From Mobula hypostoma (taxonomy: Eukaryota): 64,000 nucleotides of DNA. The first letter of the stretch is position 1, and the number at the start of each line of letters is the position of its first letter. Both the position numbers and the translations under genes were made by a program. This document shows positions 1 to 54,439 of the stretch, one piece after another. The stretch spans positions 31,868,001 to 31,932,000 of the forward strand of contig NC_086101.1 of assembly GCF_963921235.1 (NCBI RefSeq), read 5' to 3'. A model generated the notes under the pieces. That model was not told the DNA's origin. It searched no databases and saw only the letters and a program-made list of their open reading frames with translations.

Positions 1-388
1 ATACCGAAGAACATCTTTTTAAGGTGATTGCAGAAAGTGTCGGGGCGATGTCAGAGGGGAGCATGGAACACTGCTGTGGTCGTGATGGAGACTGGCACAT
101 TAAGGACAGTTCAGAGACTCTTAGTTAGTCACATGGATGAAAGAAAAATGGACAATTTGTGAGAGGGATGTGTTAGATTGACCGTGGACTGGTCTAAGAG
201 GTCAGCACAATTTTGTGGGCCAAAGGGCCAGTACTGTGCTATACCGTCCTGCTCCATGACCCTACAGAGAGAGGCCAAGACAACACGGATACTGTTATAA
301 TGGGAGAAGGAAACGTGGTGGGGAATGGTGGGGTGAAGATGGGTGACATTGGACGCCCATGTACCGCACAACCAGTGGTGTTTCTTAC

Positions 389-652
389 CGAGGAACAGGA
401 CGAGGGGCTCGGGGAGACCCCGGTGTTCCACCCGACAGGAGAACTTTGCTGTGTCCGTGGGCTCCACCCGCACCGTCCTGGTCAGCTGGTAGGTGTTGTC
501 GTGGTTGGGGAGGATCCCATGGAAATGGATCTCCTCCAGGATCCGGCCGTCCCGCAGAATAGTCACGTCGATGTACTGAGGGTAGAATCCAGTGGCCACA
601 CAGGAGAGCTGGCGGCCATCCTCGGAGGCGGTGAACGAGACTTCAGGGGGAT
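389..652 (-). CDS. MHC class I alpha3 (Ig-C1) exon, cassette B1
   Basis: 264 bp exon bounded by cag| and |GTAAG, phase 1-1. Encodes PPEVSFTASEDGRQLSCVATGFYP...KFSCRVEHRGLPEPLVLFL with both Ig-C1 cysteines. Confidence 0.95.
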
Positions 653-874
653 CTGGGGTGGGAGAGAAAGAGGAAGCATTGAGTGGAGGTAGGAAGGGGA
701 TGGGAAGAGGAGACTGCGTGGGGGGTGTTGCAGAGGAGGTGGCGGGGCTGGTGAAGGTGGGAAGGGGTGGGCAGAGGAGGCGGCAAGGGGTGGGCAGGGG
801 AGGGTGGAGATGGGGGTTGCAGACACTGACTTCCACTCCCTGGCACACACATTGACCCCACCCCACGCACTCAC

Positions 875-1147
875 TGGGTTCAAGGTGACTCCCCCCGGCC
901 TTGACATATTTCATCAGCCATTCGATGCAGGTGTGCTCCAGGTATCCCTTCCAACCCTGGTTCATGGCTGTGTCCCGGTCCCACTTGTTCTTAGTGATGA
1001 TACCCCAGGGCACAGGGGTCACCCACACCATCCGGTCCTTGTCGAAGAGGATGAAGTCTGACCCATCCCAGCCGTACTGCAGGAACCCGGCAGTGGTCCC
1101 GTCGTCACGGAGCTCACAGCCGGACATCCTCTGGAGAAAGTGGATCC
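875..1147 (-). CDS. MHC class I alpha2 exon, cassette B1
   Basis: 273 bp exon, ttccag|GG...A|GTGAGT. Encodes IHFLQRMSGCEL...WDGSDF...TKNKWD...YLEHTCIEWLMKY with C101/C164, T143, K146, W147, Y159 and Y171. Confidence 0.95.
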
Positions 1148-1639
1148 CTGGAACACATCATCCATTGGCGAGTTGTGGGGCTGTGGAAAACTTTCCATCC
1201 TGCAGATGTGGCTTTTGTTTCCACTCCCCCAGGCAGAACCAATATACACCCCACACGTTCCCCCACCGTTCACAATCCCCACTGTCACCGCTGAACAGAC
1301 CCCACCGTCACTTCTTCACCGCAACCCACCATTGACCCATCCCTACCATCACCTTCCATGTCACCCCTCACCTCCAACACGGTCCCCACCCACATCCTAC
1401 CATCACTCTCTCTCCCCACCACTGCATCTGACTCCTGCCCCGTCTCTACCATCACCCCAGCCCTCCCCACCCTGTATGATCTCTACTATCAGCCCCAAGA
1501 CAAAACCTACCATCAACCGTCACCCCCACACAATCACCATTGTCACCCCCGCCAGCCCCACAATACCTAACATCACCCCTGCCACCCCTTGCAAAATCAC
1601 TGACGACACCCACACCTACCCTCCCGCAGCCCCCTGTGC

Positions 1640-2180
1640 ATCCCCATGATCGTTAACGGCACCCCTGCACAACCACATGATCCCTAACGTCACCCCTGTA
1701 CACCCCCATGCTCACTGTCACCCCTGTACATCCCCATGATCCCTAACATCTCCCTTACCATCCCCAACAATCCCCAACACCCCGTCACCACAATTTCTAA
1801 TGTCATCCCTGCCATCCCTCCCACATACCCTAACATCACCCCTGCACCCCACAATCGCTAATGTTGCCCCTGCTAACAACCACCATCCCTCACTTCACAG
1901 TCCACAATCCCTAATGTCACCTCTACCACCCCCCCATGATCTCTAACGTCACCCCTGCTGTCCCCCACAATCCCCAACAACACCCCTCCAACCCCAAGAT
2001 CCCTAACATCACCCCTGCCATACCCAACAAAGCCCAACAACACCCCTGCCACCCAATCCCTAATGCCATCCCTGCCACCTTTCCCACGTGCCCTAACGTC
2101 ACTCCTGCCACCCCACAATCCCTAATGTCACCCCGGCTAACACCCACCATCCCTCACTTCACAGCCCACAATCGCTAATG
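1640..2180. repeat. C-rich degenerate minisatellite in intron 2 of cassette B1
   Basis: Recurrent ~27-28 bp motif of the type CCCCACAATCCCTAA(T/C)GTCACCCCTGC. Boundaries approximate. Confidence 0.75.
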
Positions 2181-2410
2181 TCACAGCCGGCACCCCCACC
2201 TCAGTCCATTGCATGACCCCCACCCCAATCACTACCATCATCTCCACCACCCCACAAACCCCACCGTCACCTTCCACACCCCTCCCCACCCCACCATCTC
2301 TACCATCAGCCCCCCCAACCACCGAAACCGTGCCTGCCATCACCCACCTAATCCCCACAACTGTGTGTTCCCCTCTGCCACCCCTCCCCGCAGCATGGTT
2401 CCCCACTCAC

Positions 2411-2671
2411 CACTCGTCTGGTTGGTCCGGTACATGAGGGTCTGGATTTCGGCCTGGGCCCACTGCTCATCGCCCTGAGAGATCCTTGTCTCCCGTTCCC
2501 AGTAGTCAGGTCCCTGAGTCTCCGCCATCCACTGCTGACGGGGAACCGACCGTCTCAACACACTGTCGTAGTAACTGATCAACAACTCATCCACATACCT
2601 GACGGTAATGAACTCAGGGACCCCCGACCCCGGGGTCACCGCCGTGGAGAAATAACGGAGAGAGTGAAAGC
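2411..2671 (-). CDS. MHC class I alpha1 exon, cassette B1
   Basis: 261 bp exon, ttccag|GC...G|GTGAGT. Encodes FHSLRYFSTAVTPGSGVPEFITVRYVD...GPDYWERET...YRTNQTS with Y7, Y59, R84 and the N86 sequon. Confidence 0.95.
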
Positions 2672-3678
2672 CTGGAACTGGATCTGAGAGTCAGAGAATA
2701 ACTTATATCTGAAACCAGGACCCTGAGGCCCAAGATGCCGGGCTTCACCCCCAACCCCCTGAGAGAATCAGAGTCCTAAAACCAGAGAATCAGGACTGTC
2801 CCCTCACCCCAAGGGGCATTTCAGCTGCACCTGAAGACAGTGAGAGTCCAAATCCCTGATCACATCTGCAGATCCCTGGCTGAGTTGCCTATATCCATGA
2901 GCTGTGGTGTCCCAACCCGGTGATGGAGCGGGGTTATGAAACAAGACACGTTCACCCGGACCAGACTGGGTTCAATCATCAGTGTGTCTCTCTGAGCTCA
3001 GGGTAAGTTGCTCTGTGAGGATAGGGATGTGCTCAGTGCAGGTGGGAAAACTCCCAATCGGGGTGAGGACTCGTACGTGCTCCCTCCCTGGTTTAGTTTC
3101 TCCCTGCTGTCAGTGGAGAGACCAGCTGAGAACTGAGGTCAGGCCGAAGGAACTAATTCCATACAGTCTGGCCCGCTGACTCTTGCACTGGGGGAAAGTA
3201 GAGCACAAAGTTACAGTTAGTCTATGAGATGATAAGAGGCACAGATAATGTGGACAACCAGCTTTTGCCTTAACCAGGAAGCAACGCCTAATACCGAAGA
3301 ACATCTTTTTAAGGTGATTGCAGAAAGTGTCGGGGCGATGTCAGAGGGGAGCATGGAACACTGCTGTGGTCGTGATGGAGACTGGCACATTAAGGACAGT
3401 TCAGAGACTCTTAGTTAGTCACATGGATGAAAGAAAAATGGACAATTTGTGAGAGGGATGTGTTAGATTGACCGTGGACTGGTCTAAGAGGTCAGCACAA
3501 TTTTGTGGGCCAAAGGGCCAGTACTGTGCTATACCGTCCTGCTCCATGACCCTACAGAGAGAGGCCAAGACAACACGGATACTGTTATAATGGGAGAAGG
3601 AAACGTGGTGGGGAATGGTGGGGTGAAGATGGGTGACATTGGACGCCCATGTACCGCACAACCAGTGGTGTTTCTTAC

Positions 3679-3942
3679 CGAGGAACAGGACGAGGGGCTC
3701 GGGGAGACCCCGGTGTTCCACCCGACAGGAGAACTTTGCTGTGTCCGTGGGCTCCACCCGCACCGTCCTGGTCAGCTGGTAGGTGTTGTCGTGGTTGGGG
3801 AGGATCCCATGGAAATGGATCTCCTCCAGGATCCGGCCGTCCCGCAGAATAGTCACGTCGATGTACTGAGGGTAGAATCCAGTAGCCACACAGGAGAGCT
3901 GGCGGCCGTCCTCGGAGGCGGTGAACGAGACTTCAGGGGGAT
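3679..3942 (-). CDS. MHC class I alpha3 exon, cassette B2
   Basis: 264 bp, intact splice sites; protein identical to the B1 alpha3. Confidence 0.95.
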
Positions 3943-4164
3943 CTGGGGTGGGAGAGAAAGAGGAAGCATTGAGTGGAGGTAGGAAGGGGATGGGAAGAGG
4001 AGAGTGCGTGGGGGGTGTTGCAGAGGAGGTGGCGGGGCTGGTGAAGGTGGGAAGGGGTGGGCAGAGGAGGCGGCAAGGGGTGGGCAGGGGAGGGTGGAGA
4101 TGGGGGTTGCAGACACTGACTTCCACTCCCTGGCACACACATTGACCCCACCCCATGCACTCAC

Positions 4165-4437
4165 TGGGTTTCAGGTGACTCCCCCCGGTCTTGACGTATT
4201 TCATCAGCCATTCGATGCAGGTGTGCTCCAGGTATCCCTTCCAACCCTGGTTCATGGCCGTGTCCCGGTCCCACTTGTTCTTAGTGATGATACCCCAGGG
4301 CACAGGGGTCACCCACACCATCCGGTCCTTGTGGAAGTGGATGAAGTCTGACCCGTCCCAGCCGTACTGCAGGAACCCGGCAGTGGTCCCGTCATTACGG
4401 AGCTCACAGCCGGACATCCTCTGGAGAAAGTGGATCC
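4165..4437 (-). CDS. MHC class I alpha2 exon, cassette B2
   Basis: 273 bp, intact splice sites, open frame; 5 aa differences from B1. Confidence 0.95.
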
Positions 4438-5089
4438 CTGGAACACATCATCCATTGGCGAGTTGTGGGGCTGTGGACAACTTTCCATCCTGCAGATGTG
4501 GCTTTTACTTCCACTCCCCCAGGCAGAATCAATATTCACCCCACACGTTCCCCCACCGTTCACAATCCCTACTGTCACCGCTGAACAGACCCCACCGTCA
4601 CTTCTTCACCGCAACCCACCATTCACCCATCCCTACCATCACCTTCCATGTCACAATGCACACCCTACCATAACTCTCTCTCCCCACCACTGCATCCGAC
4701 TCCTGCCCAGCCTCTACCATCACCCCACCCTTCCCCACCCTGTACGATCCCCACCTTCAGTCCCAAGACAAAACCTACCATCACATCCGTCTCTAAAATC
4801 CCCGTCACCCCACACAATCCCTGCCATCCCACCACCACAAATCCTTATGTCACGCCCACCAGCCCTACAATTCCCACCACACCCCACCCCATATGGTCCC
4901 TAACGTCACTCCCTCCCCCCTCACACCCGCACTCTCCCCCATCACCTCCCACCCCCCTGCATATTCCCTATCATCACTCCCTTACTCAAATATTCTTTAT
5001 TGTCAACCCCCTACCCCCACACTGGCCCTACTCTCACCCCCACACCCGCTCAAAACTTACCATCAACTGTCAGTCCCGCCAGCCCCACA

Positions 5090-6000
5090 ATCCCTAACAT
5101 CACCCCTGCCACCCCTTGCAAAATCACTGACGACACCCCCACCATCCCTCCAGCACTCTCTAACATCCCCCTGCACATTCCCATGATCACTAACGTTACC
5201 CCCGTACACCCCCATGATCACTAACATCACCCCTGTAGATTCCCATGCTCCCTAACGTCACCCCTGCACACCCATGATCACTAACGTCACCCCGTACATC
5301 CCTTTGATCACTAAGGTTACCCCTGTACACCTCCATGATCAATAACGTCACCCCTGTACACCCCCATGATCACTAACGTCACCCCTGTACATCCCCATGA
5401 TCACTGACGTCACCCCTGCACATCCCCATAATCACTAACATCACCCCGTACATCCCTTTGATTACTAAGGTCACCCCTGCCACCCCTCCTACATGTCCTA
5501 TCGTCACCACTACAACCCCACAATCCCTAATGTCACCCCTGTACACCCCCATAATCCCTAACGTCTTCCCTGTCATCCCCAACAATCCCCAACACCCCGC
5601 CACCACACTCTAATGTCATCCCTGCCATCCCTCCCACATACCCTAACATTGCACCCCACAATCCCTAATGTCACCCTGCTAACACCCACCATCCCTCACT
5701 TCACAGTCCACAGTCCCTAACGTCACCTCTACCACCCCCATGATCCCTAATGTCACCCTGCTATCACCCACAATCCCCAACAACACCCCTCTAACCCCAA
5801 GATCCCTAACATCACCCCTGCCATACCCAACAACGCCCACAACACCCCTACCACCCAACCCCTAAAGCCATCCCTGCCACCTTTCCCACGTGCCCTAACG
5901 TGATCCCTGCCACCCCACAATCCCTAATGTCACCCCTGCTAACACCCACCATCCCTCACTTCACAGCCCACAACCGCTAATGTCACAGCCGGCACCCCCA
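5090..6000. repeat. Expanded C-rich minisatellite in intron 2 of cassette B2
   Basis: Repeated GATCACTAACGTCACCCCTGTACA(C/T)CCCCAT-type units. Intron is 1773 bp versus 1263 bp in B1. Confidence 0.8.
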
Positions 6001-6210
6001 CCTCAGTCCATTACATGACCCCCACCCAATCACTACCATCACCTCCACCACCCCACAAACCCCACCGTCACCTTCCACACCCCTCCCCACCCCACTATCT
6101 CTACCATCAGCCCCTCCAACCACAACACCATGCCTGCCATCACCCCCCTAATCCCCACAACTGTGTGTTCCCCTCTGCCACCTCTCCCCGCAGCATGGTT
6201 CCCCACTCAC

Positions 6211-6471
6211 CACTCGTCTGGTTGGTCCGGTTCATGAGGGTCTGGATTTTGGCCTGGGCCCACTGCTCATCGCCCTGAGAGATCCTTGTCTCCCGTTCCC
6301 AGTAGTCAGGTCCCTGAGTCTCCGCCATCCACTGCTGACGGGGAACCGTCCGTCTCAACTCACTGTCGTAGTAACTGATCAACAACTCATCCACATACCT
6401 GACGGTAATGAACTCAGGGACCCCCGACCCCGGGGTCACCGCCGTGGAGAAATAACGGAGAGAGTGAAAGC
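6211..6471 (-). CDS. MHC class I alpha1 exon, cassette B2
   Basis: 261 bp, intact splice sites, open frame; 4 aa differences from B1. Confidence 0.95.
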
Positions 6472-7324
6472 CTGGAACCGGAGCAGAGAGTCAGAGAATA
6501 ACTTATACCTGAAAGCAGGACCCTGACTCCAAGATGCTGGGCTTCACCCCCAATCCCCTGAGAGAATCAGAGTCCTAAAACCAGAGAATCAGGACTGCCC
6601 CCTCACCCCAAGGGGCATTTCAGCTGCACCTGAAGACAGTGAGAGTCCAAATCCCTGATCACATCTGCAGATCCCTGGCTGAGCTGCCTATATCCATGAG
6701 CTGTGGTGTCCCAACCCGGTGATGGAGCGGGGTTATGAAACAAGACACGTTCACCCGGACCAGACTGGGTTCAATCATCTGTGTGTCTCTCTGAGGTCAG
6801 GGTAAGTGGCTCTGTGAGGATAGGGATGTGCTCAGTGCAGGTGGGAAAACTCCCAATCGGGGTGAGGACTTGTACGTGCTCCCTCCCTGGTTTAGTTTCT
6901 CCCTGCTGTCAGTGGAGAGACCAGCTGAGAACTTGCACCAAGTTCCCCACCAGTAGCAGCACTCTTCCAGCTCCTATAGAGTGCTTCTCACTTCACCTCT
7001 GACCCACAGTGATTCCTGGGTACTGAGAGGTATTCCTGGGATTACTGACAGGATGTCCAGAGGGTGGGGCTATTACACCTCCCACAAGAGGGTGACCTCT
7101 GTCCCATGTGCCGCTGTCTCTGGAAAACCACATTGAAAGCAGAGACAGGATCTAACTGTACGACACACTCTCCATTGATGGACAGGATGTCGCTCAGTCA
7201 ACAGAACCAGAGGCAACAGTGGGACAGGAGGAATTTGTGGGATCACTGGTGGAGGAAAGGAATAGGAAGGGTAGGAAAAGAAGGTGCGGCCATTCTATTA
7301 GATAACATTTAGCCTTTAGTGAAG

Positions 7325-7470
7325 GGATTGCACGGTAATGTAACAGTTAGCATAGCACCTTGTAGTGGCAAGGATCTGGGTTCAATTCCAGCTAAACTCT
7401 GCAAGGAGTTTGTACATTTTGCACATGAATGTGTGGATTTCATCTCGGAGCTCCAATTTCCTCTCACATG
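7325..7470 (+). mobile_element. Degenerate tRNA-derived SINE (shark HE1-like)
   Basis: Box A/B-like head (...GTTAGCATAGCACC...GGGTTCAATTCC) followed by the GGAGTTTG(T/C)ACATT body typical of elasmobranch SINEs. Confidence 0.55.
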
Positions 7471-7917
7471 CAGGCAACTATTTTCTCTGCACGTAGAAAA
7501 GACTGGGGATAAAAGAATTCGAGATGGGGACATTGGTCTGTCGCGTCTGCAGGATATGGGAGTATAGAGACATTTCCACACCTCATTAACTACTGTTGCG
7601 GGATGTGCGTCCAGCCACAGCTCATCGCTGGCCACACAGGGTTGCTGGACTCACTGTGGGTCACCTTGGATGCAGAGAATCTGGTAGAAGGTTCACCTAG
7701 TGATCTGGTCACGTTGCAGGCCCAGAATGAGAAGGTGGGTAACCACCAGGTAGGGCGGTAAGGACGGGTACGTGGTATCTGGAACACTCAGAGATCAATG
7801 TCCTCTCAACAAGTATACTATGTTGGATACTGATTTCCGAAAGAAACAACCACCAAGATTGATCTTTGAATGTTTCCTATCCATGTACCTATCAAAGTAC
7901 CTTTTAAATGTTGTTAA

Positions 7918-10900
7918 ATTACGAACAAGAGGAGACCTGCAGATGCTGGAAATCCGAGCAACACACACAAAATGCTGGAGGAACTCAGCAGGCCAGGCAG
8001 CATCTGTGGAAAAAGTACTTTGGACCTTTCGGGCCACAATCCTTCGGCAGGACTGGAGAAAAAAAGCTGAGGAGTAGATTTCATAGGTGGGGAGACGGGG
8101 GAGAGGAACACCAGGTGATAGGTGACACTTGGGTGGGAGGGATGAAGTAAAGACCTGGGAAGATGGTTGGTGAAAGAGACAGAAGCCCACCGAAGAAAGA
8201 AAAAGGGGGAAGGAACACCAGAGGGAGGTGATGGGTGGGCATGGAGATGAGGTAAGAGAGGGAAAAGGGGATGGGAGATGGTCGGGATGGGGTGCGGGGT
8301 GTTGGGGGACATTACCGGAAGTTTGAGAAATCGACGTTCATGCCATCAGGTTGGAGGCTAACCAACCTGTTCCTCTAACCTAAATATGGCCTCATCACGA
8401 CAGTGGAATTGAAATGGGTGGCCGCTGGGAGATCCCACTTGTTCTGGCAGACGGAGCGTAGATGCCTGGCAAAGCGGTCTCCCAACCTACATTGGGTCTC
8501 ACTGATATACAGGAGGCCACACCGGGAGCACCGGACACAGTATATGATCCCAACAGACTCACAGGTGAAGTGTTGCCTCATCTGGAAGGACTGTTTAGGG
8601 CCCTGAATGGTAGTGAGGGAGGAGGTGTAGGGGCAGGTGTAACACTTGTTCCGCTTGCAAGGATGCTCAATGGGATTCTCAATCGCCGGTTCTTTGACTT
8701 TCTCACGTCCTGCAAGGATCGGAAGATCTCCCGTCTACAGACCACCAAACCTATTGACTCCTATGCCGGCAGGCCCAGACGTCTCCAGACCGCGATCTCT
8801 GCTGCTGACCTCAACGGCTCTAACTATCCAGAGCAGATTCAAAACCCGGACTCCACCACCATGAGTGCAGGTTCCAATGACCTCAGACATCACCAAAGTG
8901 CCTATTGTGCAACCTGCAACTCCATCTCCGGCCTTGACCTCCATGCTGGGTCTTCAGGAGCTGCTGCTGGCACCCCCGTCTCCCCCTCCCCCACCGCCAT
9001 TCCTCAATCCCGTTTCTTTCAGATCCCACCGCCAGCTCTTGGGCTCTCGGAGACTCCCTCTTTTCTCCCTCCACCATCCTGAACACCCCAAACCTCCTTT
9101 CCCCTCAGACACTATCAACCCCCAACCACCTCTGATCCCAGCTCCCATCCGTGCTGGGTCTTTACCATTCCCTCCAACCTTCCCCTCTCTGAGGCAGAAT
9201 GTTCTGTCCTCAGTAAGGGCCTCAGCTTTGTCCCCCTGTGCCCATGACTCAGTGAGTTCCACATCCGCCACAACGCTAAGCTCTTCTTCCGCCATCCCCG
9301 TCTCCGAGCCTATTTCTTTGGCAGGGAATCTCCACCACGCACCAATGACCCCTTCTCCCATCTTCAACCATTCTCCTCTTCCTTGATGCCCCACCTTGGT
9401 CTTCTACCTGCTCTGGACCTTTTCATTGCCAACTGTTGACATGATATTAGCTGTCTAGACTTTAATACTCCTCTCTCCTATTCCAACCTAATTTCTTCCG
9501 AACGATCGGCTCTCCACTCCCTTCGCTCTAATCCTAACCTCACCATCAAACCCGCAGATAAGGGAGGCACTGTAGTAGTCTGGCGTACTGACCTCTACTT
9601 TGCTGAGGTCCAGCGCCAACTCTTAGACACCTCTTACTTACCCTCGAACAGAATCCCACTAAGGAACACCAGGCCATTGTCTCCCACACCATCACCAACC
9701 TTATTGACTCTGGGGATCTCCCATCCACCGCCACCAACTTCATAGTTCCTGCACCCCACACCTCCTGTTTCTACTTCTTACCCAAGATCCACAAACCTGT
9801 TTGTCCAGGTAGACCCATTGTTTCAGCTTGTACCTGCCCCACTGAACTCATATCTGCATACCTCGATTCTGTTTTATCCCCCCAGTTCAGTCCCTTCCCA
9901 CCTACATCCGTGACACCTCACATGCTCTTGATCTATTCAAGGATTTCAAGTTCCCCGCCCCCATCATCTTATTTTTACTATGGATGTCCAGTCCCTATAC
10001 ACCTCCATCCCCACCAGGAAGGCCTCGAACCTCTCTGTTTTTTCTGGACACCAGACCTAACCAGTTCCCCTACACCACCACTCTCCTCTACTTAGTGGAA
10101 CTTGTCCTCACTCTAAATAATTTCTCCTTTGGCTCCTTCCACTTCCCTCAAACAAAAGGTGTAGCCATGGGCACTTGCATGGGTCCCAGCTATGCCTGCC
10201 TTTTTTGTCGGCTACATGGAACATTCTATGTTCCAAGCCGACACCGGTGGCCGCCCCCCATTTTCCCTATGCAACATCGACGACTGCTTTGGTGCTGCTT
10301 CCTGCAGCCATGCAGAGTTCGCCAACTTCATCCACTTTGCCTCCAACTTCCACCTTGCCCTTAAATTCGTCTGGTCCATTTCCAACACCTCCCTTCCCTT
10401 TATCAATCTCTTTGTCTCTGTTTCTGGGAACAGCTTATCTACTGATGTCTATTACAAATCCATGGACTCTCACAGCCACCTAGCCTACACCCCATCCCAT
10501 GCTACTACTTGTAAAAATGCCATCCCCTTTTCTCAATTTACCCACCTGCACTGCATCTGCTCTCAGGATGATGCTTTTCATTCTAGAATGAAGGAGATGT
10601 CATCCTTTTTCAAAGAAAGGGGTTTCCATTCCTCCACCATCAATGCTGCCCTCAATGGCATCTCTTCCATTTCATGCACCTCTGCTCTTACTCCAACCTC
10701 CCTCCTCCGGCCACCCTACCTGGGATAGGGTTCCTGTTATCCTCACCTACCATCCCACCAGTCTCCGCATCCAGCACATAATTCTCCGAAACTTCCACCA
10801 CCTCCAACGGGATCGCACCACCAAGCACATTTTTCCCTCCCCCCCCCCCGACTTTCCACTTTCCGCAGGGATCGCTTCCTGCATGACTCCCTCGTCCATT

Positions 10901-11699
10901 CATCCCTCCCCACTGATCTCCCTCCTGGCACTTATCCTTGCAAGCCAAACAAGTGCTACACCTGCCCCTGTACCTCCTCCCTCACTACTATCCAGGGCCC
11001 TAAACAGTACTTCCAGGTGAGGCGACACTTCACCTGTGAGTCTGTTGAGGTCATTTGCTGTGTTCGGTGCTACCGGTGTGGCCTCCTGTATTTCGGTGAG
11101 ACACAACGTAGATTGGAAGACTGCTTTGCCGAACTTCTATGCTCCATCCGCTAGAACAAGCGGGATCTCCCAGTGGCCACCCATTTTAATTTCACCTCCC
11201 ATTCCTATTCCAATATGTCCCTCCATGGCCTCCTCCATTGTTGTGATGAGGCCACACTTAGGCTGGAGGAACAATACCTTGTATTCCGTTTGGGTAGCCT
11301 CCAACCTGATGGTATGAACGTCAATTTCTTGAACTTCCAGTAATGCCCCCAACCCCACTTCTCTATTTCCCATCTCCATTTCCCTCTCTCACCTCATCTC
11401 CATATCCACTCATCGCCTCCCTCTGGTGTCCTTCACCCTTTTTCTTTCTTCCATGTTCTTCTGTCTCTTTCACCAATCAACTTCACAGCTCTTTACTTCA
11501 TTCCCCCCCCCAACCCTCCAGATTTCATCTATCAGCTGGAGCTTCTCCCCACCGCGCACCCCCCCCACCTTTCAAATCTACCCCTGAGCTTTTTTTCCCT
11601 CCAGTCCCGCAGAAGTATTTCGGCCTGACACGTCAACTGTACTCTTTTCCATAGATGCTGCCTGGCCTGCTGAATTCTTCCAGCATTTTGTGTGTGCAG
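7918..11699 (+). mobile_element. Penelope-like retroelement (RT + GIY-YIG), degraded, with an inverted 3' arm at 7918-8663
   Basis: RT motifs QTKGVAMGTCMGPSYAC, (Y)IDD-like NIDD and KNAIPFSQF. GIY-YIG region HFTCES..I.CVRC..CGLLY.GET occurs on + (~11020-11150) and on - (8375-8581). A 17 bp direct repeat CTTTTAAATGTTGTTAA flanks it at 7901-7917 and 11700-11716. Confidence 0.9.
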
Positions 11700-11979
11700 C
11701 TTTTAAATGTTGTTAATGTACCTGACTCAACCACTTAATCTGGAACCTTCTCTGGCAAAGATGAACCACACATTAGGTGCAGAAGCTGCCCTTTGTTAAC
11801 TTATCTTCCCTTCACGTTAAACCTTTTCCCACAAGTCTTGATCACCCAACACTAGAAAAAAGATTGTGAGCATTCACCCTCAAGATGTTACCATAAGAAC
11901 AGAAGGCATAGAAGCACAATGAGCTATTCAGCCCACTGAGCAGGCACTGCCATCTTAACATTCAAGGTTTCAATGAGAT

Positions 11980-13300
11980 CCTTCCTCATTCTTCTAAATT
12001 CTGGCGAGCACAAGCCCAGAGCCATCAGTCACTCCACATACGATATTATTCCTGGAATCATTCTCATGAACCTCCTCTGAATCCTTTTCAATGTCAGCAC
12101 ACCCTGTCCTAAATAAGGGGCCCAGAACTGCTCACAACTCTCCAAGTGAGACCTCACCAGTGCATTAGAGAGCCTTAACTTTCTAAATATCCTTAGCATC
12201 CTTGCTTTTATATTCTAGTACTCTCGAAATGAATGCTAACATCGCATTTCCCTTCCACGAAATCCTGCACAAGAACTCCCGAATCCCTTTGCACCTCAGA
12301 CTTGTGAATTTTCTCTCCATTTAGAAAATATTCTATGCCTTTACTCCTTCTACCAAAATCCATGACCATACACTTCCCGACACTGCATTCCATCCGCTAC
12401 TTCTTTGCCCCTTCTCCTAATCTGTCTATGTGCTTCTGCCGACCCCTTGTTTCCTCACCACTACCTGTCCCTCCACCTATCTTTGTGTCATCCTCAACCT
12501 GCGCCATAAGCAATCAATTCCATCATGCACATTATTGACATACAAGGTAAAGAGAAGCGGTCCCAACACCAGCTCCTGCAGACAGCACTAGTCACCAGCA
12601 GCCAAACAGAAAAGGCTTCTATTATTACCACTTCTAGCTTCCTGCCAATCAGCCAATGCACGATTCATGCGATATCTTTCCTGTAATACCATGGTCCCTT
12701 GTTAAACAGCCTCATGTGAGGCACCTTGCCAATGGTCTTCTGAAAATTCATGTACACAGCATCCACCAATTCTCTATCCTGTTCATTACACACTTTGACA
12801 AGATCATCCCTCATTCTCCTAATCTCCAATGACAAAACACCCAAGCCACTCAACCACTCTCCATAACAGTCCTTCCAGCCCAAGGAACATGCTGATAACT
12901 CACTTCTGGTCCATTACAACTTAATGGCTTCTTTCCTGAAACAGACTGACCAAAACAGATCACAATACTCCAAATGAAACTGCTCCAATGTCCCAGAAAT
13001 AATAAATCAACTTCCATACTCAGTGCCTTGACTGATGAAGGTGATCCTGCCAAAACCCTTCTTTGCCACCCTATCTACCTGTGATGCCACTTTCAGAGAA
13101 CTTTGTAGTTGAAGACCTTGAACCTCTTCTACAACACTCCCAACTATTCACCTTGAAAGTCATGCCAGGATTTGATTTCCTAAATTACAGAACCTCATAC
13201 TTATCTGAACTAATTTGTCATTGCATGAACCATTTACACCACTGGCCAAGATCCCTCTGTAATTTTTGACAATCTTCTGCACAGGCTGTCTGTTTGGTTA
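11980..13300 (-). mobile_element. CR1 LINE ORF2 fragments
   Basis: Minus-strand remnants such as MECSVGKCMVMDFG, YFLNGEKI, VDAVYMNFQKTIGKVPH. Confidence 0.75.
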
Positions 13301-13429
13301 CCTTCTTCAATGCCTGTCTGTCTATTTATTTATTTAGAGGACAAGCCCTTCCAGCCTTTCAAGCCAAACTGCCAGCAACCCCCATTTAAATTTTAGCCTA
13401 GTCCTAATCACAGATCAATTGAAAATGAC

Positions 13430-13615
13430 CAATTAACCAACTAACTGGTACATCTTTGGACTGTAGGATGAAACTGGAGTACCTGGAGAAAACCCAGGCA
13501 TGCTCTGGGGAGGGAGTACAAACTCCTTGAGGAAGATGCTAGAACTGAAGCCTGAAATCTGATGCCCTGAGCTGTGATAATGTCACACTAACTGCTCCAC
13601 TACCGTGGCACCCAA
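13430..13615 (-). mobile_element. tRNA-derived SINE remnant
   Basis: Reverse complement of a SINE head and body (GGGTGCCACGGTAGTGGAGCAGTTAG..., AGGAGTTTGTAC). A paralogous copy lies at about 60100-60255. Confidence 0.55.
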
Positions 13616-13919
13616 CACGATGAGGGTCAGTGTGCAACATGCTAAGAAGCTGGGCTTCTAAAGGAAGAGGTCATGTAAGGTCTTTGAAGCACATGAAAGT
13701 GGCTAAGTCCATAGGGCCTGTTGGGATATACCCAGGTTATTGAGAGAGGCAAGAGATAAGATTGATAGGGCCTGATAATGATCTTTATGAACTGTGATCT
13801 TGAATAATTGTTCTTTTGTGGTAAAAGGGAAAGTCCTGGTAACTACAGGGCAGTAGTAGGGAAGCGACTGACAAAAACTAAATGAAAGGACAACACTCTG
13901 ACTCCTCCCACTGATCCAA

Positions 13920-14900
13920 TTATGTATTGATTTGGCTAGCTTACCCTGGATCCCATATGTTCTCACTTTCTGGACCTGTCCACCATGTAGGATGTCATCA
14001 AAAGCCTTTCTGGAGTCCATGTTGGCAACATCTACTGCCCATCCCTTGTCAATCCTCTTGGTCCCCTCTCCAAAGACTGCAGTCAGATTTGTGAGAAACA
14101 GTTTCACAGCCCTTGCCTTTCCAAATACAGGTTGATCCAGTTTCTCGGAATCCTATCTGGTACATTTTCCAGCACTAACGTTAGGTTCAACAGCCTGTAG
14201 TTCCCAGCTTGCCCATGCAATCTTTCTTACGTAAAAGGATAACATCAGGTATCTTCCAATCTTCTGGTACCATACCCTTGTCTATTGAAGAAACTGATCT
14301 CCCAGGGCCCTTACAATTTCTGCCTTCATTCTTATAATATCCTTGGGTACTCTCATTCAGACCCATGGATTTATCCATTTTTATGCACCTCAAGAACACC
14401 AACACCTCATTTGTAATATTGAAATGTTTCAGGATGTCTCTATAGTCTTTCCTGAGTTCCCCAGCTTGGGCCTGACCTTCTCCCCAGTTAAGTGGAGATA
14501 TGAAGTATTTATTTGAGACCTCTGGCTCCACATATATACAGCCACACTGATCCTTCAGGGACATCTGCTCTCCCCAATTAGCCCTTTGTTCTTGATATAC
14601 GGATAATTTTCGGATTATCCTTGACGGAGAAGGTAAAGAAGATCTCATTCTCCCTATGATGGAAATGCATAAGACGGTGGTCAGGCTACTGTGAACATGT
14701 CTGCTCAGCATACCATTGGAGGCTAAGAGGTGACCTGATATGTAAGATAAGAGCCATAGATAGGATAGAAAATCAAAATCCTTTTCATAGGGGTATGAAA
14801 ACTTGAGGTCGGAATTAAGGTGAGAGGCAGCAGCTTTACAGGAAATCTGTTGTATTTACACAGAGAGCGTTGGTATTTGAAATTCATTGCTAGTGGTGAG
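13920..14900 (-). mobile_element. CR1 LINE fragments
   Basis: RIDKGWAVDVANMDSRKAFDDILHG and KIPDVILLRKK on the minus strand; a CR1 3' piece in plus orientation at about 14750-14900. Confidence 0.6.
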
Positions 14901-14907
14901 TTTAAGA

Positions 14908-15611
14908 AGGCGCTGATGACTTGGCGACTTCGGGCTGGTGGATAACGAAACAAGGAAAACAACTAAATACTTTGTTAATCCCAATATTTCTGGCAAGTAA
15001 TAGCCTGTAACTTCCCTTTGGACTCGGAGGCAATTTGATGTGGCAGAACCGAGGCATTGGGCCCGTCACCGAGAGCGGGGAAGACCCGAAGTTCGATCTT
15101 TCGAAGTGCAAATGTCAGTTACCGGCCGAACTGAGGCGGCGCGGTCGGGGCACCAGGGCGGATTGGAGAGACTGGACTCGATCGTTTGAAAGGAGACAAG
15201 CACAGGGCCGAATCGGAAAGATTGGTTACAGTCCGAATCTTGGCGGCGCGGTCGCAGCACAGAACGTATCAAGGCGATTGAACCCTATATTCGATTTTGG
15301 CTCCCGGCAGGTTGAAGAGGTCAGGGTGAGGGGGGCCCGGGGCAAAGGAGGGGCCGGTTCATATCGCTGCTCCGTGACTCTGCTCTGCGCTGAACTACGG
15401 GACTCTGTTTGCGGACTTCATTTCAGAATGCTATGTGCTTGCAGCTATTGTTTGCACGAGGATTTTTCCCCCTCTGCACATTGGGTGTTTGGCAGTCTTT
15501 TTCAGATGGGTTCTTTTAGGTTTTTTTTGTTTCGTGGCTGCCTGTTAGGAGACGAACCGCAAGTATAATGTACACAAACTTTGATAATAAATGTACATTG
15601 ACAGAACTTTG
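14908..15611 (+). mobile_element. Unclassified non-autonomous retroelement-like insertion
   Basis: CpG-rich 5' part, a 3' end with AATAAA and a short tail; it interrupts a CR1 3' remnant. Confidence 0.35.
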
Positions 15612-16697
15612 AGGATGTGGTGCAGACTAATCCGAGCATTGCATTTAAGAGGCAATTGGACACTTGAGTAGGAAAAATCCGGCAAGGACGGTTCCAGGAC
15701 CGGCTGAGAAAGAAAGGAGGCACGGTGCTTGCGGCCTCATTCCGTAAAAACCCAGAGTGACAGAAACTCCGAAGATTTCATCCCTGGGCGAGGAAGGATC
15801 TTCGATTAGAAGACACCTGCTGGGCTGCACCTGGGGACAACTTGAAAGACTGGCTAGGATTCTAGCGATCTGCAGTCGGCGGCCCCTGCCCCAGTAGGGG
15901 AGATGGGATTCAGCTGGGCTTGAATGGGAAAGGTATAGGAGGGATGTTGTATATCTATGCACAACCCCCTCTGGTCAGTTGCACCTCAGTTCCACCATTT
16001 TACCCGCATTGTCTCTCCAACATCAGAAGCGGAAAACGCTGGAATTTCTGAACAGCTGAGCCAGCACCATATTTAATGTTTCAGGTCCAGAACTGGGAAA
16101 CTGAGAAAACGAGTGGGTGGGAGGGATTGGACAAGTACACTATCTCTGATACGGTGGTCAGCGCTGGCCGGTACATACACTCGTCTGATGATCAGATGCC
16201 TTCACAATGCCAAGGTGCTTCACTTACTGACACTCCTGTAACACATTTAACCTGCTTCGCACAGCCCAGTCCGAACCTCTCGCTGTCCTCTTGGGCCAAG
16301 CTGCGGAAATGCCCGCTGCACAGCTTTACCGCAGTCATGAACGTGTCGGGAGGAAGCAGTTCTCCAGCATGGGGACGGAGGACTGAACTGGCTCGTCCAT
16401 ACCGTGCTATAAACCAGACCTCTGCCCACCTCCATCCCAGGTCAGTGAAGGTGCCGAGGTTAACCCATACACCCCCCCCCCCCGCGCTTCCCTCCCTACT
16501 TCCCCTCCCGTATGCAGTCTCTGCGGGGTTTCCCACCACATCAACCTCCCACCCCCACCACCACACTGATACTCATTGTGCTCAGGCTGGGTGGCGTGGG
16601 ACCTTGACATCTTGACGAGGGACGATCACGCTGTGTCCATCCGCTCACTTACTGACCGGGGGCTGAATGTCCCGCTGACCATTGCCCCTTCACTCAC

Positions 16698-16749
16698 CTG
16701 CGGAGACCCCTCCACACAGGAGGGCCAGCAGTAGTAGACGCAACACCAT
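16698..16749 (-). CDS. MHC class I signal-peptide (leader) exon, probable exon 1 of gene B
   Basis: ATG...GCA G|GTGAGT, 52 bp, phase 1, encoding MVLRLLLLALLCGGVSA. In frame with alpha1 at 6471 (G+GC = Gly). Confidence 0.85.
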
Positions 16750-51017: not shown

Positions 51018-51044
51018 TTTTGGTGGGATTGTAGCCTTTGTTCC
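51018..51044 (-). CDS. Class I gene A cytoplasmic exon 1
   Basis: 27 bp, catcag|GG...A|GTAAG, encoding (G)NKGYNPTK with the conserved cytoplasmic Tyr. Confidence 0.85.
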
Positions 51045-52247
51045 CTGATGAAAAACAGCCTGCTGTAAAACACAGAGACAGTCTGTGAGAACAGTCCCAC
51101 ATCCCCAGCTTATAACCAGATAGATTCATCTCCTGCCCAGTGAGCTCTGAATTCCAATCAAACAGAACTTGAGGTACAAGTTGTGAAAGGAGACACATCC
51201 AACAGGATCAGTGTGGCCCCAACTCATTGCAAGGCCATGAGACAGAACAAAGCTGGTGTGTGACAGAGTGGTCAGTGGGAGATTTGGAGTGACCATTTAC
51301 CCTAATACTGACCCTGACCCTGGTCAGGTTCACCAGGTATGGATGCACACGGTAATGAAAGGCTCAGGTGGGGCAGGTAGGAGGAACTGATTTCCCGGAG
51401 CAGAGGAGTCCAAGATCAGAATCTGTCAGTGAGGAGCAAGAAACTGGAAGTGACCGGAGGAAGGAATGTTTCACCCAAACCCAGAGGGTGGCTGGAATCG
51501 AACACACTGTCTGCAGGAACGGTGAAGGCAGACTCTCATATCATTGAAGATAGACTGAGGCAGGTAAGTCAGAGAGGGCGAGAAAATAGGATCAGAGTAT
51601 ACAGGTACATGTGATCATTAATGGCATGTCAGGCCGAAGGATCTAATTCCATACAGTCAGACTCGATGACTCATGCACTGGGGAAAGTAGAAAACAAAGT
51701 TTCCATTCATCGATGAGATGATAAGAGGCTTAGATAAAGTGGACAGCCAACCTTTTTTTAACCAGGGAAGTAATGCCTAATACCAAAGAACATCCCTGTA
51801 AGGTGATAGAAGGGAAGTACAGGGGCGCAGATGTCAGAGGGGTGTGTGGAACACTGCTCGGGGTGGTGGTCGAAGCTGACACATTAAGGACGTTTAAGAG
51901 GCTCATGAATGAAAGAAAAATGGGGGGTTTGTGGGAGGGAATGGTTAGATTGACAGTGGAGTAGTTTAAGAGGGCAGCACAACTTTGTGGGCCAGAGGCT
52001 GGTACTGTGCTATACTGTTTTGTGCTCCATGACCCTGCACTTAGAGGCAGTGAGTGGTAGAGACAACATGGATACTGTCATACTGAGAGAAGGAAAAGTG
52101 ACGGGGAATGGGGGGTGAAGACAGGCAGCACTGGATGTGGGTACCCTTGGGTGTAGAAACGCAAGGGTACTGGGATGGGGTTCGCTGAGGAATACACCCT
52201 GCCCAAGCCCCCTTCCCCAGGGGAAGTCCAACTCCCTCCAGTCCTAC

Positions 52248-52349
52248 CTTTCTTTTTGTAGGCAACACCAATAGCGATGACCACCACCAGGATCACCAGG
52301 ACCACAACTATAGCGATGATCCAGATTGGGATGGAGTTGGGCTTCGGAT
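52248..52349 (-). CDS. Class I gene A transmembrane exon
   Basis: 102 bp, tag|AT...G|GTAGG, encoding PKPNSIPIWIIAIVVVLVILVVVIAIGVAYKKK. Confidence 0.92.
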
Positions 52350-52645
52350 CTATTGGTGATTCAGAGAAACAGTCACATCAGTGACAGAGACAGTGTTAAC
52401 CCCGATTCTCCTTCACCAACCCCACCCACACCCTCCCATCCCACCAACCACCCTGTCTCAGAAACACGGATTTCTCCCCCTGTCCTCTCCTGGGCCTGTG
52501 GTCAGCAGTGACCCCTCACTGTGCTCTTGGACCAGAGGTCAACAGTGACCCCTCACCATCACAGCTCCCAGCCCTGGGCCAGTGGTCAGCCAAGCCCCCT
52601 CCCTCTCACTGCCCATGTACCGCCCCACCAGTGAGTGTCTCTTAC

Positions 52646-52909
52646 CCGGGAAGGGCAGGGAGGGCTCGGGGAGACCCCGGTGTTCCACCCGACAGGAGAA
52701 CTTTGCTGTGTCCGTGGGCTCCACCCGCACCGTCCTGGTCAGCTGGTAGGTGTTGTCGTGATTGGGGAGGATCCCGTGGGAATGGATCTCCTCCAGGATC
52801 CGGCCGTCCTGCTGAATAGTCACATCAATGGACTGAGGGTAGAAGCCAGTGGCCACACAGGAGAGGTGGCGGCCGTCCTCAGAGGTGGTGAACGAGACTT
52901 CGGGGGGAT
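52646..52909 (-). CDS. Class I gene A alpha3 exon
   Basis: 264 bp, intact sites, PPEVSFTTSEDGRHLSCVATGFYP...FSCRVEHRGLPEP. Confidence 0.95.
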
Positions 52910-52939
52910 CTGGGGTGGGAGAGAAAGCAGTGAGTGGGG

Positions 52940-54030
52940 GCAGGAAGGGAGGAAGAGGAGATGGTGAAGGGGGTTGTAGGGGAGGGCAAAGGGGGAGAGG
53001 CAATGCAAGGGGGAGGTAACGGCAAGTGGGGAGGGGAATCAGCAGGGGAGGAGAGAGCAAGGGGGTGGAGAGGAAATGATGAGGGGGAGAGGAAACAGGA
53101 AGAGAGGAAGGGAAACCGTGAGGGGGGAAGAGGTTAAAGGCAAGGTGGAGAGGAGATGGCGAGTTGGGAGAGGAAATGGAGAGGGGCAGAGAGGGGACAG
53201 CGAGAAGGGGGAGAGGAGATGGTGGGTGGGGGAGAGGACATGAGGTGGGGTGAGGGGAATCTGCAATGGGGAAAGGGAGATGACGGAGGGAGGAGACGGT
53301 GGGGTGAGGGGAGAGGAGACAGGGATGAGGGGAGGTTGGTGAGTACGGGAGGGGAAATGGCGAGGGGATGAAGAGGAAGCAGTGAGGGGGCAGAGGGGCA
53401 AGGGGGAAAGCAGACAGCGGGGGGAATGGTGAGCAGGCGAGGAGGCAGCAAGGGGGGAGAGGAGACAGTGAGAAGGGGGGAAAGGAGACAGTGAGAAGGG
53501 AAGGGGAGAGGGTGAGGGGGCAGAGAGGAGACTGTGAAAGGGGAGAGGAGGAGGTGCGGGGCAGAGGGCGACGGGGAAGAGCAGACATGCGGGGGGTGAG
53601 GAGTCAGCGAAGGGGTGAAGAGGTGACGGTGAAAGTGGGAGAGGAGGGGGAGGGGGAGAAGGAAAGGGCAATTGGGGAGAGGAGACGGTGAGGGGGGAGA
53701 GGAAAGAGCGAGGAGTGGGAGAGGGAGGGGGTTGAGGGGGCAAGGGGGGAGGGGACAGGGAACACGGAGACGATTGGGGGGCAACCTGATGGGGAGCGAG
53801 GAGATAGAGGTTGAAGACACGGGAGGTGAAGAGACAGGGAAGAAAGGCACAGAGGTGAGGAGGCAAGGGATGAAGAGATGAGGTGAGGAGATTGAGGCGA
53901 GGAAATGAGGATGAATAGACAGAGGCCAAGGGGACGAGGGTGCAAAGAGACAAGGCGTGATCAGATGGGGAGCGTGGAGAGGAAGTGTGAGGGGACGTCA
54001 AAGGGAGGGGCGAGGAGATGGCGATGGGGT
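52940..54030. repeat. Purine-rich (G/A on +) low-complexity tract, intron 3 of gene A
   Basis: Long GGGGAGAGGAGA-type tract; intron is 1172 bp versus 222 bp in the B cassettes. Confidence 0.85.
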
Positions 54031-54081
54031 GGGGGGGGAGCTCTCCCAGACACACATTTCTCCACCACAACCCCCACTCAC

Positions 54082-54354: not shown

Positions 54355-54439
54355 CTGCAACAAACTGTCTGTCAGGGGGAGGAGGATACAACTTCCCCAT
54401 CCTGTAAATCCTCACAGTCACCCCTACACAATCGTAAAC

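What the first reader, a model, noticed from the sequence alone, without database searches (positions are those of the whole stretch)
389..16749. Possible tandem-ectodomain MHC class I chain: leader-(alpha1-alpha2-alpha3)x2 or more
Seen in the sequence: two complete alpha1/alpha2/alpha3 cassettes lie head-to-tail. The duplicated unit contains no leader, TM or cytoplasmic exon. All six exons are open, phase 1-1, with canonical GT/AG sites. Splicing B2 alpha3 (donor after 3679) to B1 alpha1 (acceptor before 2671) across a 1007 bp intron gives ...PLVLFL-G-FHSLRYF... in frame. The only same-strand leader found upstream of either cassette is at 16749-16698. Established: a class I heavy chain normally has one ectodomain. 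Inference: this locus could encode a 17 aa leader plus at least 2 x 266 aa, a concatenated, multivalent peptide/beta2m-binding class I molecule. The window starts inside B1's downstream intron, so more units may lie to the left. Domain-duplicated shark nonclassical class I variants may already be reported, so the literature needs checking before calling this new.
Basis: partly seen in the sequence, partly recalled or inferred. Interest (0 to 1): 0.92.

Follow-up and report, generated by a model that had tools for sequence, protein, structure and literature searches.

The report
Ray MHC-I chain with three ectodomains
A devil ray gene strings three complete peptide-binding MHC class I units onto one chain with no membrane anchor; its RNA is spliced that way and related rays carry the same kind of gene, so rays probably make a secreted, multivalent MHC class I protein that no paper we could find describes.

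Summary
The window is from Mobula hypostoma. It holds two intact, head-to-tail alpha1-alpha2-alpha3 cassettes, B2 and B1, on the minus strand. A third cassette, B0, lies just left of the window.

RefSeq already models the gene as LOC134346730 isoform X1, 838 aa, labelled "uncharacterized protein". Its layout is leader, three cassettes, then a 15-residue tail.

Contigs of a run coded as RNA carry the predicted alpha3-to-alpha1 splice at a depth like that of the ordinary exon joints. This adds a DPVP linker.

Every cassette has lost the transmembrane exon to one shared deletion. The chain ends in the old last cytoplasmic exon, so it should be secreted.

M. birostris has the same two DNA junctions and the same acceptor, which excludes an assembly artefact. 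Hypanus sabinus has two cassettes with the same TM deletion. Pristis pectinata has three cassettes and an inverted TM exon. Both have tandem TM-less versions with different linkers.

The cassettes are of the classical type: the best solved match is nurse shark class I, and all peptide-end-binding residues are kept. Protein, secretion and function are untested. No paper was found.

The scan noted the same gene in the overlapping neighbouring window of this genome (s1-142225), not on other DNA.

The parts
16698..16749 (-). Leader exon (MVLRLLLLALLCGGVSA + first base of Gly), start of the CDS of LOC134346730
   Evidence: Translation and GT donor. Only same-strand leader found by tblastn. Equals the N-terminus of P0267 and P0154.
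6472..16697 (-). Intron 1, 10.2 kb, with LINE/RT fragments
   Evidence: RT-like ORFs at 13703-14711. The gene span in L001 is 6001-27427.
6211..6471 (-). Cassette 1 (B2) alpha1 exon, phase 1-1
   Evidence: RNA contig 6261-6359 with 0 mismatches at depth 10438, and joint 6210->4436.
4165..4437 (-). Cassette 1 (B2) alpha2 exon
   Evidence: RNA joints 4436/6210 and 3942/4165.
3679..3942 (-). Cassette 1 (B2) alpha3 exon; its donor is spliced to the next alpha1
   Evidence: RNA joint 3679->2683 with GT..AG ends at depth 7241.
2684..3678 (-). Inter-cassette intron (995 nt). It carries the TM-exon deletion scar (about 3648/3647), a high-copy repeat (3403-3534) and the tandem-duplication DNA junction (3134/3138).
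   Evidence: Alignment with gene C. Self-BLAST. DNA contig 3105-3438 with 0 mismatches in X4, and RNA depth of about 41 against 0 in the alpha1-alpha2 introns.
2411..2683 (-). Cassette 2 (B1) alpha1 exon, including a 12-nt 5' extension (2683-2672) that encodes the DPVP linker
   Evidence: RNA joint. RefSeq proteins read ...LVLFLDPVPGFHSLRYF. The derived AG is present only in internal cassettes.
875..1147 (-). Cassette 2 (B1) alpha2 exon
   Evidence: RNA joint 1146/2410 in X2.
389..652 (-). Cassette 2 (B1) alpha3 exon
   Evidence: RNA contig 544-652 with 0 mismatches.
1..388 (-). Start of the second inter-cassette intron, with the same TM deletion at about 358/357. It continues left of the window to cassette 3 (B0) and the tail exon.
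   Evidence: L001 22362-27427: B0 alpha1 at 23356, alpha2 at 25273, alpha3 at 25742-26008, last exon encoding ASDKGESSSNSSAMA-stop at 27381-27427.
51019..57101 (-). Gene C, the neighbouring single-ectodomain paralogue that keeps its TM exon. Used as comparator; not part of the tandem gene.
   Evidence: tblastn hits for alpha1 57101-56844, alpha2 54355-54083, alpha3 52910-52650. TM exon and GNKGYNPTK exon.

Best explanation
This is one gene, Mobula hypostoma LOC134346730. An internal segment holding exons alpha1, alpha2 and alpha3 has been tandemly duplicated, so the gene now carries three cassettes behind a single leader.

All class I exons are phase 1. Splicing each alpha3 donor to the next alpha1 acceptor therefore stays in frame. 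The product is an 838-aa chain: signal peptide, ectodomain 1, DPVP, ectodomain 2, DPVP, ectodomain 3, then a 15-residue tail.

The TM exon was deleted before the duplication, so the chain has no membrane anchor. It ends in the former last cytoplasmic exon.

Shown here:
- the exon structure and the DNA junctions;
- the in-frame alpha3-to-alpha1 splice in RNA contigs, at a depth like that of the constitutive joints;
- the alpha3-to-tail splice;
- the absence of any TM segment;
- conservation of the architecture in four ray species.

Inferred: the protein enters the ER and each cassette folds as a classical-type class I unit that binds beta2m and a peptide. The molecule is then secreted as a natural trivalent peptide-MHC-I. 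The three units differ only in alpha1/alpha2, so they would carry slightly different groove specificities. It could engage TCR/CD8 or NK-type receptors with high avidity, most plausibly as a soluble immune modulator.
For: Exons, phases and splice sites.

Tandem units and junctions.

RNA (run X1):
- Joint 3679->2683 has GT..AG ends at depth 7241. The B2 alpha1-alpha2 joint has depth 7734.
- The loose end at 3679 equals the last exon of L001 (ASDKGESSSN...).
- The alpha1-alpha2 introns have depth 0, so this is RNA and not DNA carry-over.
- B1-type alpha1 depth is about twice B2-type (15800 against about 8400). This is expected if B1 and the near-identical B0 are both present with B2 in equal amounts.

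RefSeq X1 (P0267, 838 aa) and X2 (P0154) match the window exons exactly.

Pfam finds 3 x MHC_I and 3 x C1-set.

The best solved relative is nurse shark class I, 6LUP, E 7e-101 over residues 1-265. Identical residues sit at the Tyr7, Tyr59, Arg84, Thr143, Lys146, Trp147, Tyr159 and Tyr171 equivalents and at the cysteines.

The only hydrophobic 19-mer is the leader (2.07). The gene C TM scores 3.76.

M. birostris has the same two DNA junctions (97-98% over 100 bp) and the same derived acceptor, in internal cassettes only.

Hypanus shares the exact TM-deletion boundaries and has two cassettes. Pristis has three cassettes, and its TM exon is inverted.

All 11 cassettes in the four species are open. 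Between Mobula and Hypanus the alpha3 dN/dS is 0.4-0.56.
Against: - There is no protein-level evidence. Secretion, beta2m pairing and peptide loading are inferred.
- The RNA evidence is one run of short de Bruijn contigs (side 29), so it cannot show that one molecule carries all three cassettes.
- RefSeq lists exon-skipping isoforms (X2 here, X2-X5 in M. birostris), so splicing is heterogeneous.
- A second RNA run (X2) shows only B1-type alpha1/alpha2.
- Alpha1/alpha2 dN/dS between Mobula and Hypanus is about 0.9-1.9. That fits diversifying selection, but also relaxed constraint.
- Open frames could be partly maintained by gene conversion from the neighbouring classical gene.
- The AF2 model of the whole chain was too poor to judge geometry (pLDDT 46).
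Confidence: 0.7

Rival explanations
1. Transcribed relic. The gene lost its TM exon and is decaying. Its strong class I promoter still drives abundant RNA, and the in-frame joins are a by-product of phase-1 exons. No stable or useful protein is made.
For: - TM exon deleted.
- Many exon-skipping isoforms.
- Alpha1/alpha2 dN/dS near or above 1 between Mobula and Hypanus.
- No protein data.
Against: - The TM-less state predates the Mobula-Hypanus split: the deletion boundaries are identical.
- Even so, 11 cassettes of 798 nt in four species have no stop or frameshift.
- Alpha3 dN/dS is 0.4-0.56.
- Linker-making changes occur specifically at internal cassettes in three lineages.
- RNA depth is very high.
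Confidence: 0.17
2. Cassette choice. The three cassettes are alternative exon sets. Most mature mRNAs carry only one ectodomain (the leader spliced to one cassette, then the tail), so the locus yields several soluble single-ectodomain variants rather than a multivalent chain.
For: - RefSeq isoforms that skip exons.
- Run X2 shows only B1-type alpha1/alpha2.
- Short contigs cannot phase cassettes.
Against: - The alpha3->alpha1 joint depth (7241) is comparable to constitutive joints.
- No RefSeq isoform has fewer than two alpha3 domains.
- The derived upstream acceptor and the linkers would be pointless under cassette choice.
Confidence: 0.1
3. Assembly artefact: a false haplotype or collapsed-repeat duplication placed in tandem.
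For: The units are 93-97% identical, and MHC regions are hard to assemble.
Against: - There are no gaps in the window.
- DNA contigs assembled independently from reads carry the junction k-mers (X4, 3105-3438, 0 mismatches).
- The same two junctions are present in a different species' assembly.
- RNA is spliced across the junction intron.
Confidence: 0.01

Closest known systems
Elasmobranch classical MHC class I (UAA type; nurse shark structure PDB 6LUP, described in PMC8236899)
   Same: Each cassette aligns end to end with 6LUP (E 7e-101). It has the same exon-per-domain, phase-1 organisation, the same cysteines, the N-glycosylation site and all peptide-end-binding residues. The neighbouring gene C and Hypanus P0164 are the ordinary TM-bearing form with the same last exon.
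   Different: There are three ectodomains per chain instead of one. There is no connecting peptide or TM exon and no GNKGYNPTK exon in the mRNA.
Secreted single-ectodomain class I molecules: mouse H2-Q10 and soluble HLA-G isoforms (from general knowledge), salmon Sasa-ULA (PMC2846915 abstract)
   Same: A class I heavy chain with a signal peptide but no membrane anchor, so expected to be soluble.
   Different: Those have one ectodomain. Here there are three in tandem, and the TM loss is a genomic deletion shared by Mobula and Hypanus.
RefSeq gene models in other rays: M. birostris XP_072115023.1 (836 aa), Hypanus sabinus XP_059826596.1/XP_059826598.1 (573/563 aa), Pristis pectinata XP_051899585.1 (573 aa)
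   Same: One leader, two or three classical-type cassettes, no TM, and the tail A[ST]DKGES...SSA.A.
   Different: The linkers differ. Mobula uses DPV[PS] from an upstream acceptor. Hypanus uses a direct join or an included GNKGYNPTK exon. Pristis uses a 30-nt extension of alpha3 (DLPEPIPQLH). Duplication breakpoints differ between genera. All are automatic, unnamed predictions.
Engineered peptide-MHC multimers (dimers, tetramers) used to stain T cells (general knowledge)
   Same: Several peptide-MHC-I units held together to gain avidity for low-affinity receptors.
   Different: Those are laboratory constructs joined through streptavidin or Fc. This would be a genetically encoded single chain.

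Membership tests
MHC class I heavy chain | alpha1-alpha2 platform domain (Pfam PF00129) | tested here: met
   Three stretches, E 3.6e-145.
MHC class I heavy chain | Membrane-proximal C1-set Ig domain (alpha3) | tested here: met
   Three PF07654 stretches, E 1.5e-42.
MHC class I heavy chain | One exon per domain, all introns phase 1 | tested here: met
   Exon ends and phases read directly from the sequence.
Classical (peptide-presenting) class I, elasmobranch UAA type | Conserved residues that bind the peptide termini (HLA numbering Tyr7, Tyr59, Tyr/Arg84, Thr143, Lys146, Trp147, Tyr159, Tyr171) and the two disulfides | tested here: met
   Residues are identical to nurse shark 6LUP at the aligned positions: Y7, Y57, R82, T139, K142, W143, Y156, Y168, C98/C161 in cassette numbering. 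The mapping to HLA numbers is from general knowledge.
Classical (peptide-presenting) class I, elasmobranch UAA type | Connecting peptide, transmembrane helix and cytoplasmic tail | tested here: not met
   The TM exon is deleted in all three cassettes. No hydrophobic segment follows the leader.
Classical (peptide-presenting) class I, elasmobranch UAA type | One ectodomain per chain | tested here: not met
   Three cassettes are joined in the mRNA and the RefSeq model.
Classical (peptide-presenting) class I, elasmobranch UAA type | High allelic polymorphism and ubiquitous expression | not tested
   Only one genome and two coded RNA runs were seen.
Classical (peptide-presenting) class I, elasmobranch UAA type | Association with beta2-microglobulin and bound peptide | not testable with these tools
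   Needs protein work. The single-chain AF2 model was uninformative.
Secreted class I (H2-Q10 / soluble HLA-G / salmon ULA kind) | Signal peptide present; no TM or GPI signal at the C-terminus | tested here: met
   The leader scores 2.07 on a Kyte-Doolittle 19-mer. The tail ASDKGESSSNSSAMA is hydrophilic.
Secreted class I (H2-Q10 / soluble HLA-G / salmon ULA kind) | Protein found in body fluids | not testable with these tools
   No proteomic data were available.

The most novel reading that the evidence does not exclude
Rays make a genetically encoded, secreted, multivalent peptide-MHC class I, in effect a natural MHC trimer. It derives from the classical gene, has been kept since before the Mobula-Hypanus split, and has a parallel version in sawfish. 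Linkers evolved separately in each lineage, and the cassettes are kept similar by gene conversion while differing in the groove. It would act as a high-avidity soluble ligand for T-cell or NK-type receptors, for example in tolerance or immune modulation.
Probability: 0.45. Interest if true: 0.92.

Novelty: new variant of a known kind. Interest (0 to 1): 0.8.

Why it matters
Every described class I heavy chain carries one peptide-binding ectodomain, and avidity comes from clustering on a membrane. A single secreted chain carrying two or three classical-type, groove-competent units would be a new molecular format for antigen presentation or immune regulation. It occurs in one of the oldest lineages with adaptive immunity.

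It is directly testable: the gene is highly transcribed and its sequence is known in four species. It gives comparative immunologists a natural counterpart to laboratory MHC multimers.

The locus also shows how the all-phase-1 exon design of MHC genes allows whole ectodomains to be multiplied in frame. It documents concerted evolution inside a single gene.

Tried and rejected
1. The joint found uses 2683, though 20 joints were not displayed.
2. A whole-chain AF2 model from an 11-row alignment gave mean pLDDT 45.7 and pTM 0.27. It is too poor for any statement on inter-cassette geometry, so no fold search was run.
3. Eight literature searches found nothing on tandem or multi-ectodomain class I in rays, sharks or other vertebrates. 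Verissimo et al. 2023 has no occurrence of "tandem", "soluble", "secreted", "batoid" or "transmembrane" in its text. The library lacks most subscription-journal papers, so a description there cannot be excluded.
4. P0158 (Mustelus) and P0159 (Pristis LOC127585955) looked like tandem proteins. They have a TM helix and a new leader between units, so they are fused neighbouring genes and were not counted.
5. The look-up of encoding contigs on isoform X5 (P0001) found nothing, because only the longest isoform is indexed. This was solved through the cluster members.
6. The cassette tree cannot date the duplication, because cassettes cluster by species. The shared DNA junction was used instead.
7. 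No leader for gene C, and no class I exons for the plus-strand leader, were found in the window.
8. Contigs of organism B (X8) neither confirm nor exclude the junction: one piece starts exactly at 3135.


Full report
**What is in the window.** Reading 1-6600 on the minus strand shows two complete class I exon sets.
- B2: alpha1 6471-6211, alpha2 4437-4165, alpha3 3942-3679.
- B1: alpha1 2671-2411, alpha2 1147-875, alpha3 652-389.

Each exon has an AG acceptor and a GT donor and is phase 1-1. Each cassette is 798 nt, or 266 codons.

Self-BLAST shows that 1-3134 equals 3291-6933, at 96% and 93% identity. A sharp DNA junction lies at 3134/3138. There, sequence homologous to the region downstream of alpha3 abuts sequence homologous to the region 463 bp upstream of alpha1.

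The cassettes differ at 16 coding positions, 10 non-synonymous and 6 synonymous. All nine amino-acid changes lie in alpha1/alpha2.

A third class I gene, C, lies at 57101-51019 on the minus strand. It has one ectodomain, a TM exon and a GNKGYNPTK cytoplasmic exon. Compared with C, both B cassettes lack about 475 bp that include the TM exon.

The only same-strand leader is at 16749-16698. A paralogous leader faces it at 17149-17202.

**Identity of the gene.** A full-library protein search with the alpha2-intron-alpha3 ORF returned a 654-aa protein with five matched stretches. It is XP_072115027.1 of Mobula birostris.

Searching with that protein found Mobula hypostoma LOC134346730 isoform X2 (P0154). 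Its cluster mate is isoform X1 (P0267, 838 aa, XP_062904366.1).

P0267 contains the window's leader and the B2 and B1 cassettes residue for residue. It then has a third cassette and the tail ASDKGESSSNSSAMA.

The locus fetched for P0267 (L001) is 100% identical to window 1-22749; window position p corresponds to L001 position 22750-p. L001 shows cassette B0 just left of the window: alpha1 at 23356, alpha2 at 25273, alpha3 at 25742-26008.

Downstream of B0 lie the same TM deletion and a GDNGYNPTK exon with intact splice sites (27098-27130) that is skipped. The last exon is at 27381-27427.

Pfam sees three MHC_I and three C1-set domains. Apart from the leader there is no hydrophobic segment.

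**RNA evidence.** Four runs were laid on 500-6499. In run X1, the exons have word depths in the thousands, while the long alpha1-alpha2 introns have depth 0. The material therefore behaves as RNA.

One contig joins 3679 to 2683, skipping 995 nt with GT..AG ends, at depth 7241. The B2 alpha1-alpha2 joint has depth 7734 and the B2 alpha2-alpha3 joint 2533.

The acceptor is 12 nt upstream of the canonical alpha1 acceptor. The join reads ...LVLFL-D-P-V-P-G-FHSLRYF, exactly as in the RefSeq proteins.

A loose end at 3679 is the reverse complement of the start of the last exon in L001. Alpha3 is therefore also spliced straight to the tail, as expected for the last cassette.

The inter-cassette intron is present at depth of about 41, as expected for pre-mRNA.

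B1-type alpha1 has about twice the depth of B2-type alpha1 (15800 against about 8400). This fits B1 plus the near-identical B0 being equimolar with B2, although word depth is a rough measure.

Limits of this evidence:
- The contigs are short, with 29 letters on the shorter side of the joint.
- They cannot phase cassettes.
- Only one run carries this evidence.
- Run X2 shows only a B1-type alpha1-alpha2 joint, plus a paralogue with a TM exon.

**Not an artefact.** The window has no gaps. DNA contigs from reads of the same species cover the junction side with no mismatch (X4, 3105-3438).

The M. birostris locus (L004, for P0269, 836 aa) has both junctions at 97-98% identity over 100 bp and the same unit boundaries.

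In both Mobula species the internal cassettes carry the derived ...ctcAG|ATCCAGTT... acceptor. The first cassette, gene C, Hypanus and Pristis keep the ancestral ...ctctgctccgg... form or close variants of it, without the upstream AG.

**Evolution.** The single-copy flank is 95.8% identical between the two Mobula species. Units within a species are 97-100% identical, and units between species are 94-95.5% identical. The protein tree groups cassettes by species.

Given the shared junction, this means concerted evolution. Alternatively, each species gained its third copy separately from a two-cassette ancestor.

Hypanus sabinus (L003) has two cassettes with exactly the same TM-deletion boundaries as Mobula. 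The anchorless gene therefore predates their split.

The Hypanus duplication unit is different. A 3.2-kb spacer keeps the GNKGYNPTK exon. One isoform uses that exon as a linker and another joins the cassettes directly.

Pristis pectinata (L002) has three genomic cassettes. The alpha3 exons of cassettes 1 and 2, but not 3, carry a 30-nt extension that supplies a DLPEPIPQ[LV]H linker. A TM-exon-like sequence lies inverted 420-530 bp downstream of the last alpha3.

So three lineages reach the same architecture with different joins and two different ways of losing the TM exon.

Between Mobula and Hypanus, dN/dS is about 0.9-1.9 in alpha1/alpha2 and 0.4-0.56 in alpha3. None of the 11 cassettes has a stop or frameshift.

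**What kind of class I.** A cassette aligns over residues 1-265 with nurse shark class I, 6LUP (E 7e-101). Residues are identical at the positions that bind peptide termini, at the disulfide cysteines and at the N-glycosylation site.

The TM-bearing Hypanus paralogue P0164 ends in ...GNKGYNPTK-TSDKGESSSNSSATA. The tandem gene's tail is therefore simply the ordinary last cytoplasmic exon.

**Interpretation.**
- Shown: the gene structure, the in-frame inter-cassette splice in RNA, the lack of a TM segment, and conservation across species.
- Inferred: secretion, folding with three beta2m, peptide loading and any receptor engagement.

The main rival is a well-transcribed relic. The long-kept open frames, the constraint on alpha3 and the lineage-specific linker changes at internal cassettes argue against it.

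**Novelty.** The models are public in RefSeq but unnamed ("uncharacterized protein"; one Hypanus isoform is called "hereditary hemochromatosis protein homolog"). Eight full-text searches found no description of a multi-ectodomain class I.

The scan's own notes flagged the same gene from the overlapping neighbouring window (s1-142225), the TM deletion (s1-142226) and the tail exons (s1-143653). I checked each on the sequence.

Noticed in passing
window 17149-17202 (+): A second class I leader exon (MKLLLLLFALLCGWVSTG) lies head to head with the gene's leader, 399 bp away. No class I exons follow it on the plus strand anywhere in the window.
   Followed up: partly
window 51019-57101 (-): Gene C is a single-ectodomain, TM-bearing class I paralogue. 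It is 73% identical to B in alpha1 and alpha2 and 88% in alpha3. Its leader was not found up to position 64000, so its intron 1 exceeds 6.9 kb or its leader lies outside the window.
   Followed up: partly
window 3403-3534 (also 113-244): A short element inside the inter-cassette intron has DNA word depths of 12,000-45,000 in two species, with many loose ends at its borders. It is a very high-copy, SINE-like repeat.
   Followed up: no
window 1500-2330, 4600-6130, 54500-56700: The alpha1-alpha2 introns are built of G-rich minisatellite units (70-80% alike). They differ in length between cassettes (1263 against 1773 nt).
   Followed up: no
window 653-874 and 3943-4164: The 222-nt alpha2-alpha3 intron is open and in frame in both cassettes; it would add 74 proline-rich residues. 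One RNA contig (623-904, depth 16) spans it, so retention occurs at a very low level.
   Followed up: partly
L002 35704-35808 (Pristis pectinata): A TM-exon-like sequence (DRKSSSVPVTVIAVVLVTLVVV...) lies in inverted orientation 420-530 bp downstream of the last alpha3. This is a different route to an anchorless chain from the deletion seen in Mobula and Hypanus.
   Followed up: partly
L002 18257-18295 and 24979-25011: In Pristis only the two alpha3 exons that are followed by another cassette carry a 30-nt extension. It looks like a tandem copy of the LPEPLILL codons and serves as the linker.
   Followed up: partly
L001 27098-27130 (left of the window): A GDNGYNPTK cytoplasmic exon with intact AG and GT sites is skipped both in the RefSeq models and in the RNA loose end. 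In Hypanus the equivalent exon between cassettes is optionally included.
   Followed up: partly
L004 about 23600 (M. birostris cassette 3 alpha3): A 6-nt deletion shortens the end of the last alpha3 (HRSLFLVLFL instead of HRSLSEPLVLFL).
   Followed up: no
proteins P0004, P0006, P0008, P0028, P0167, P0171, P0185, P0186 and others: Automatic gene models in salmonids, characiforms, lizards and birds also hold two or three class I ectodomains, with no TM between them or none at all. They could be fused neighbouring genes or real tandem chains. None was checked.
   Followed up: no
window 4100-6499, run X2: The second RNA run has no contigs on B2 alpha1/alpha2 but does have B1-type ones. It also has an alpha3 from a paralogue with a TM exon. 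Possible causes are low coverage, an isoform without cassette 1, or a haplotype with fewer cassettes.
   Followed up: no
window 45078-47121 (+), 13703-14711 (-): LINE reverse-transcriptase ORFs: 211 and 342 aa on the plus strand, and fragments inside intron 1.
   Followed up: no
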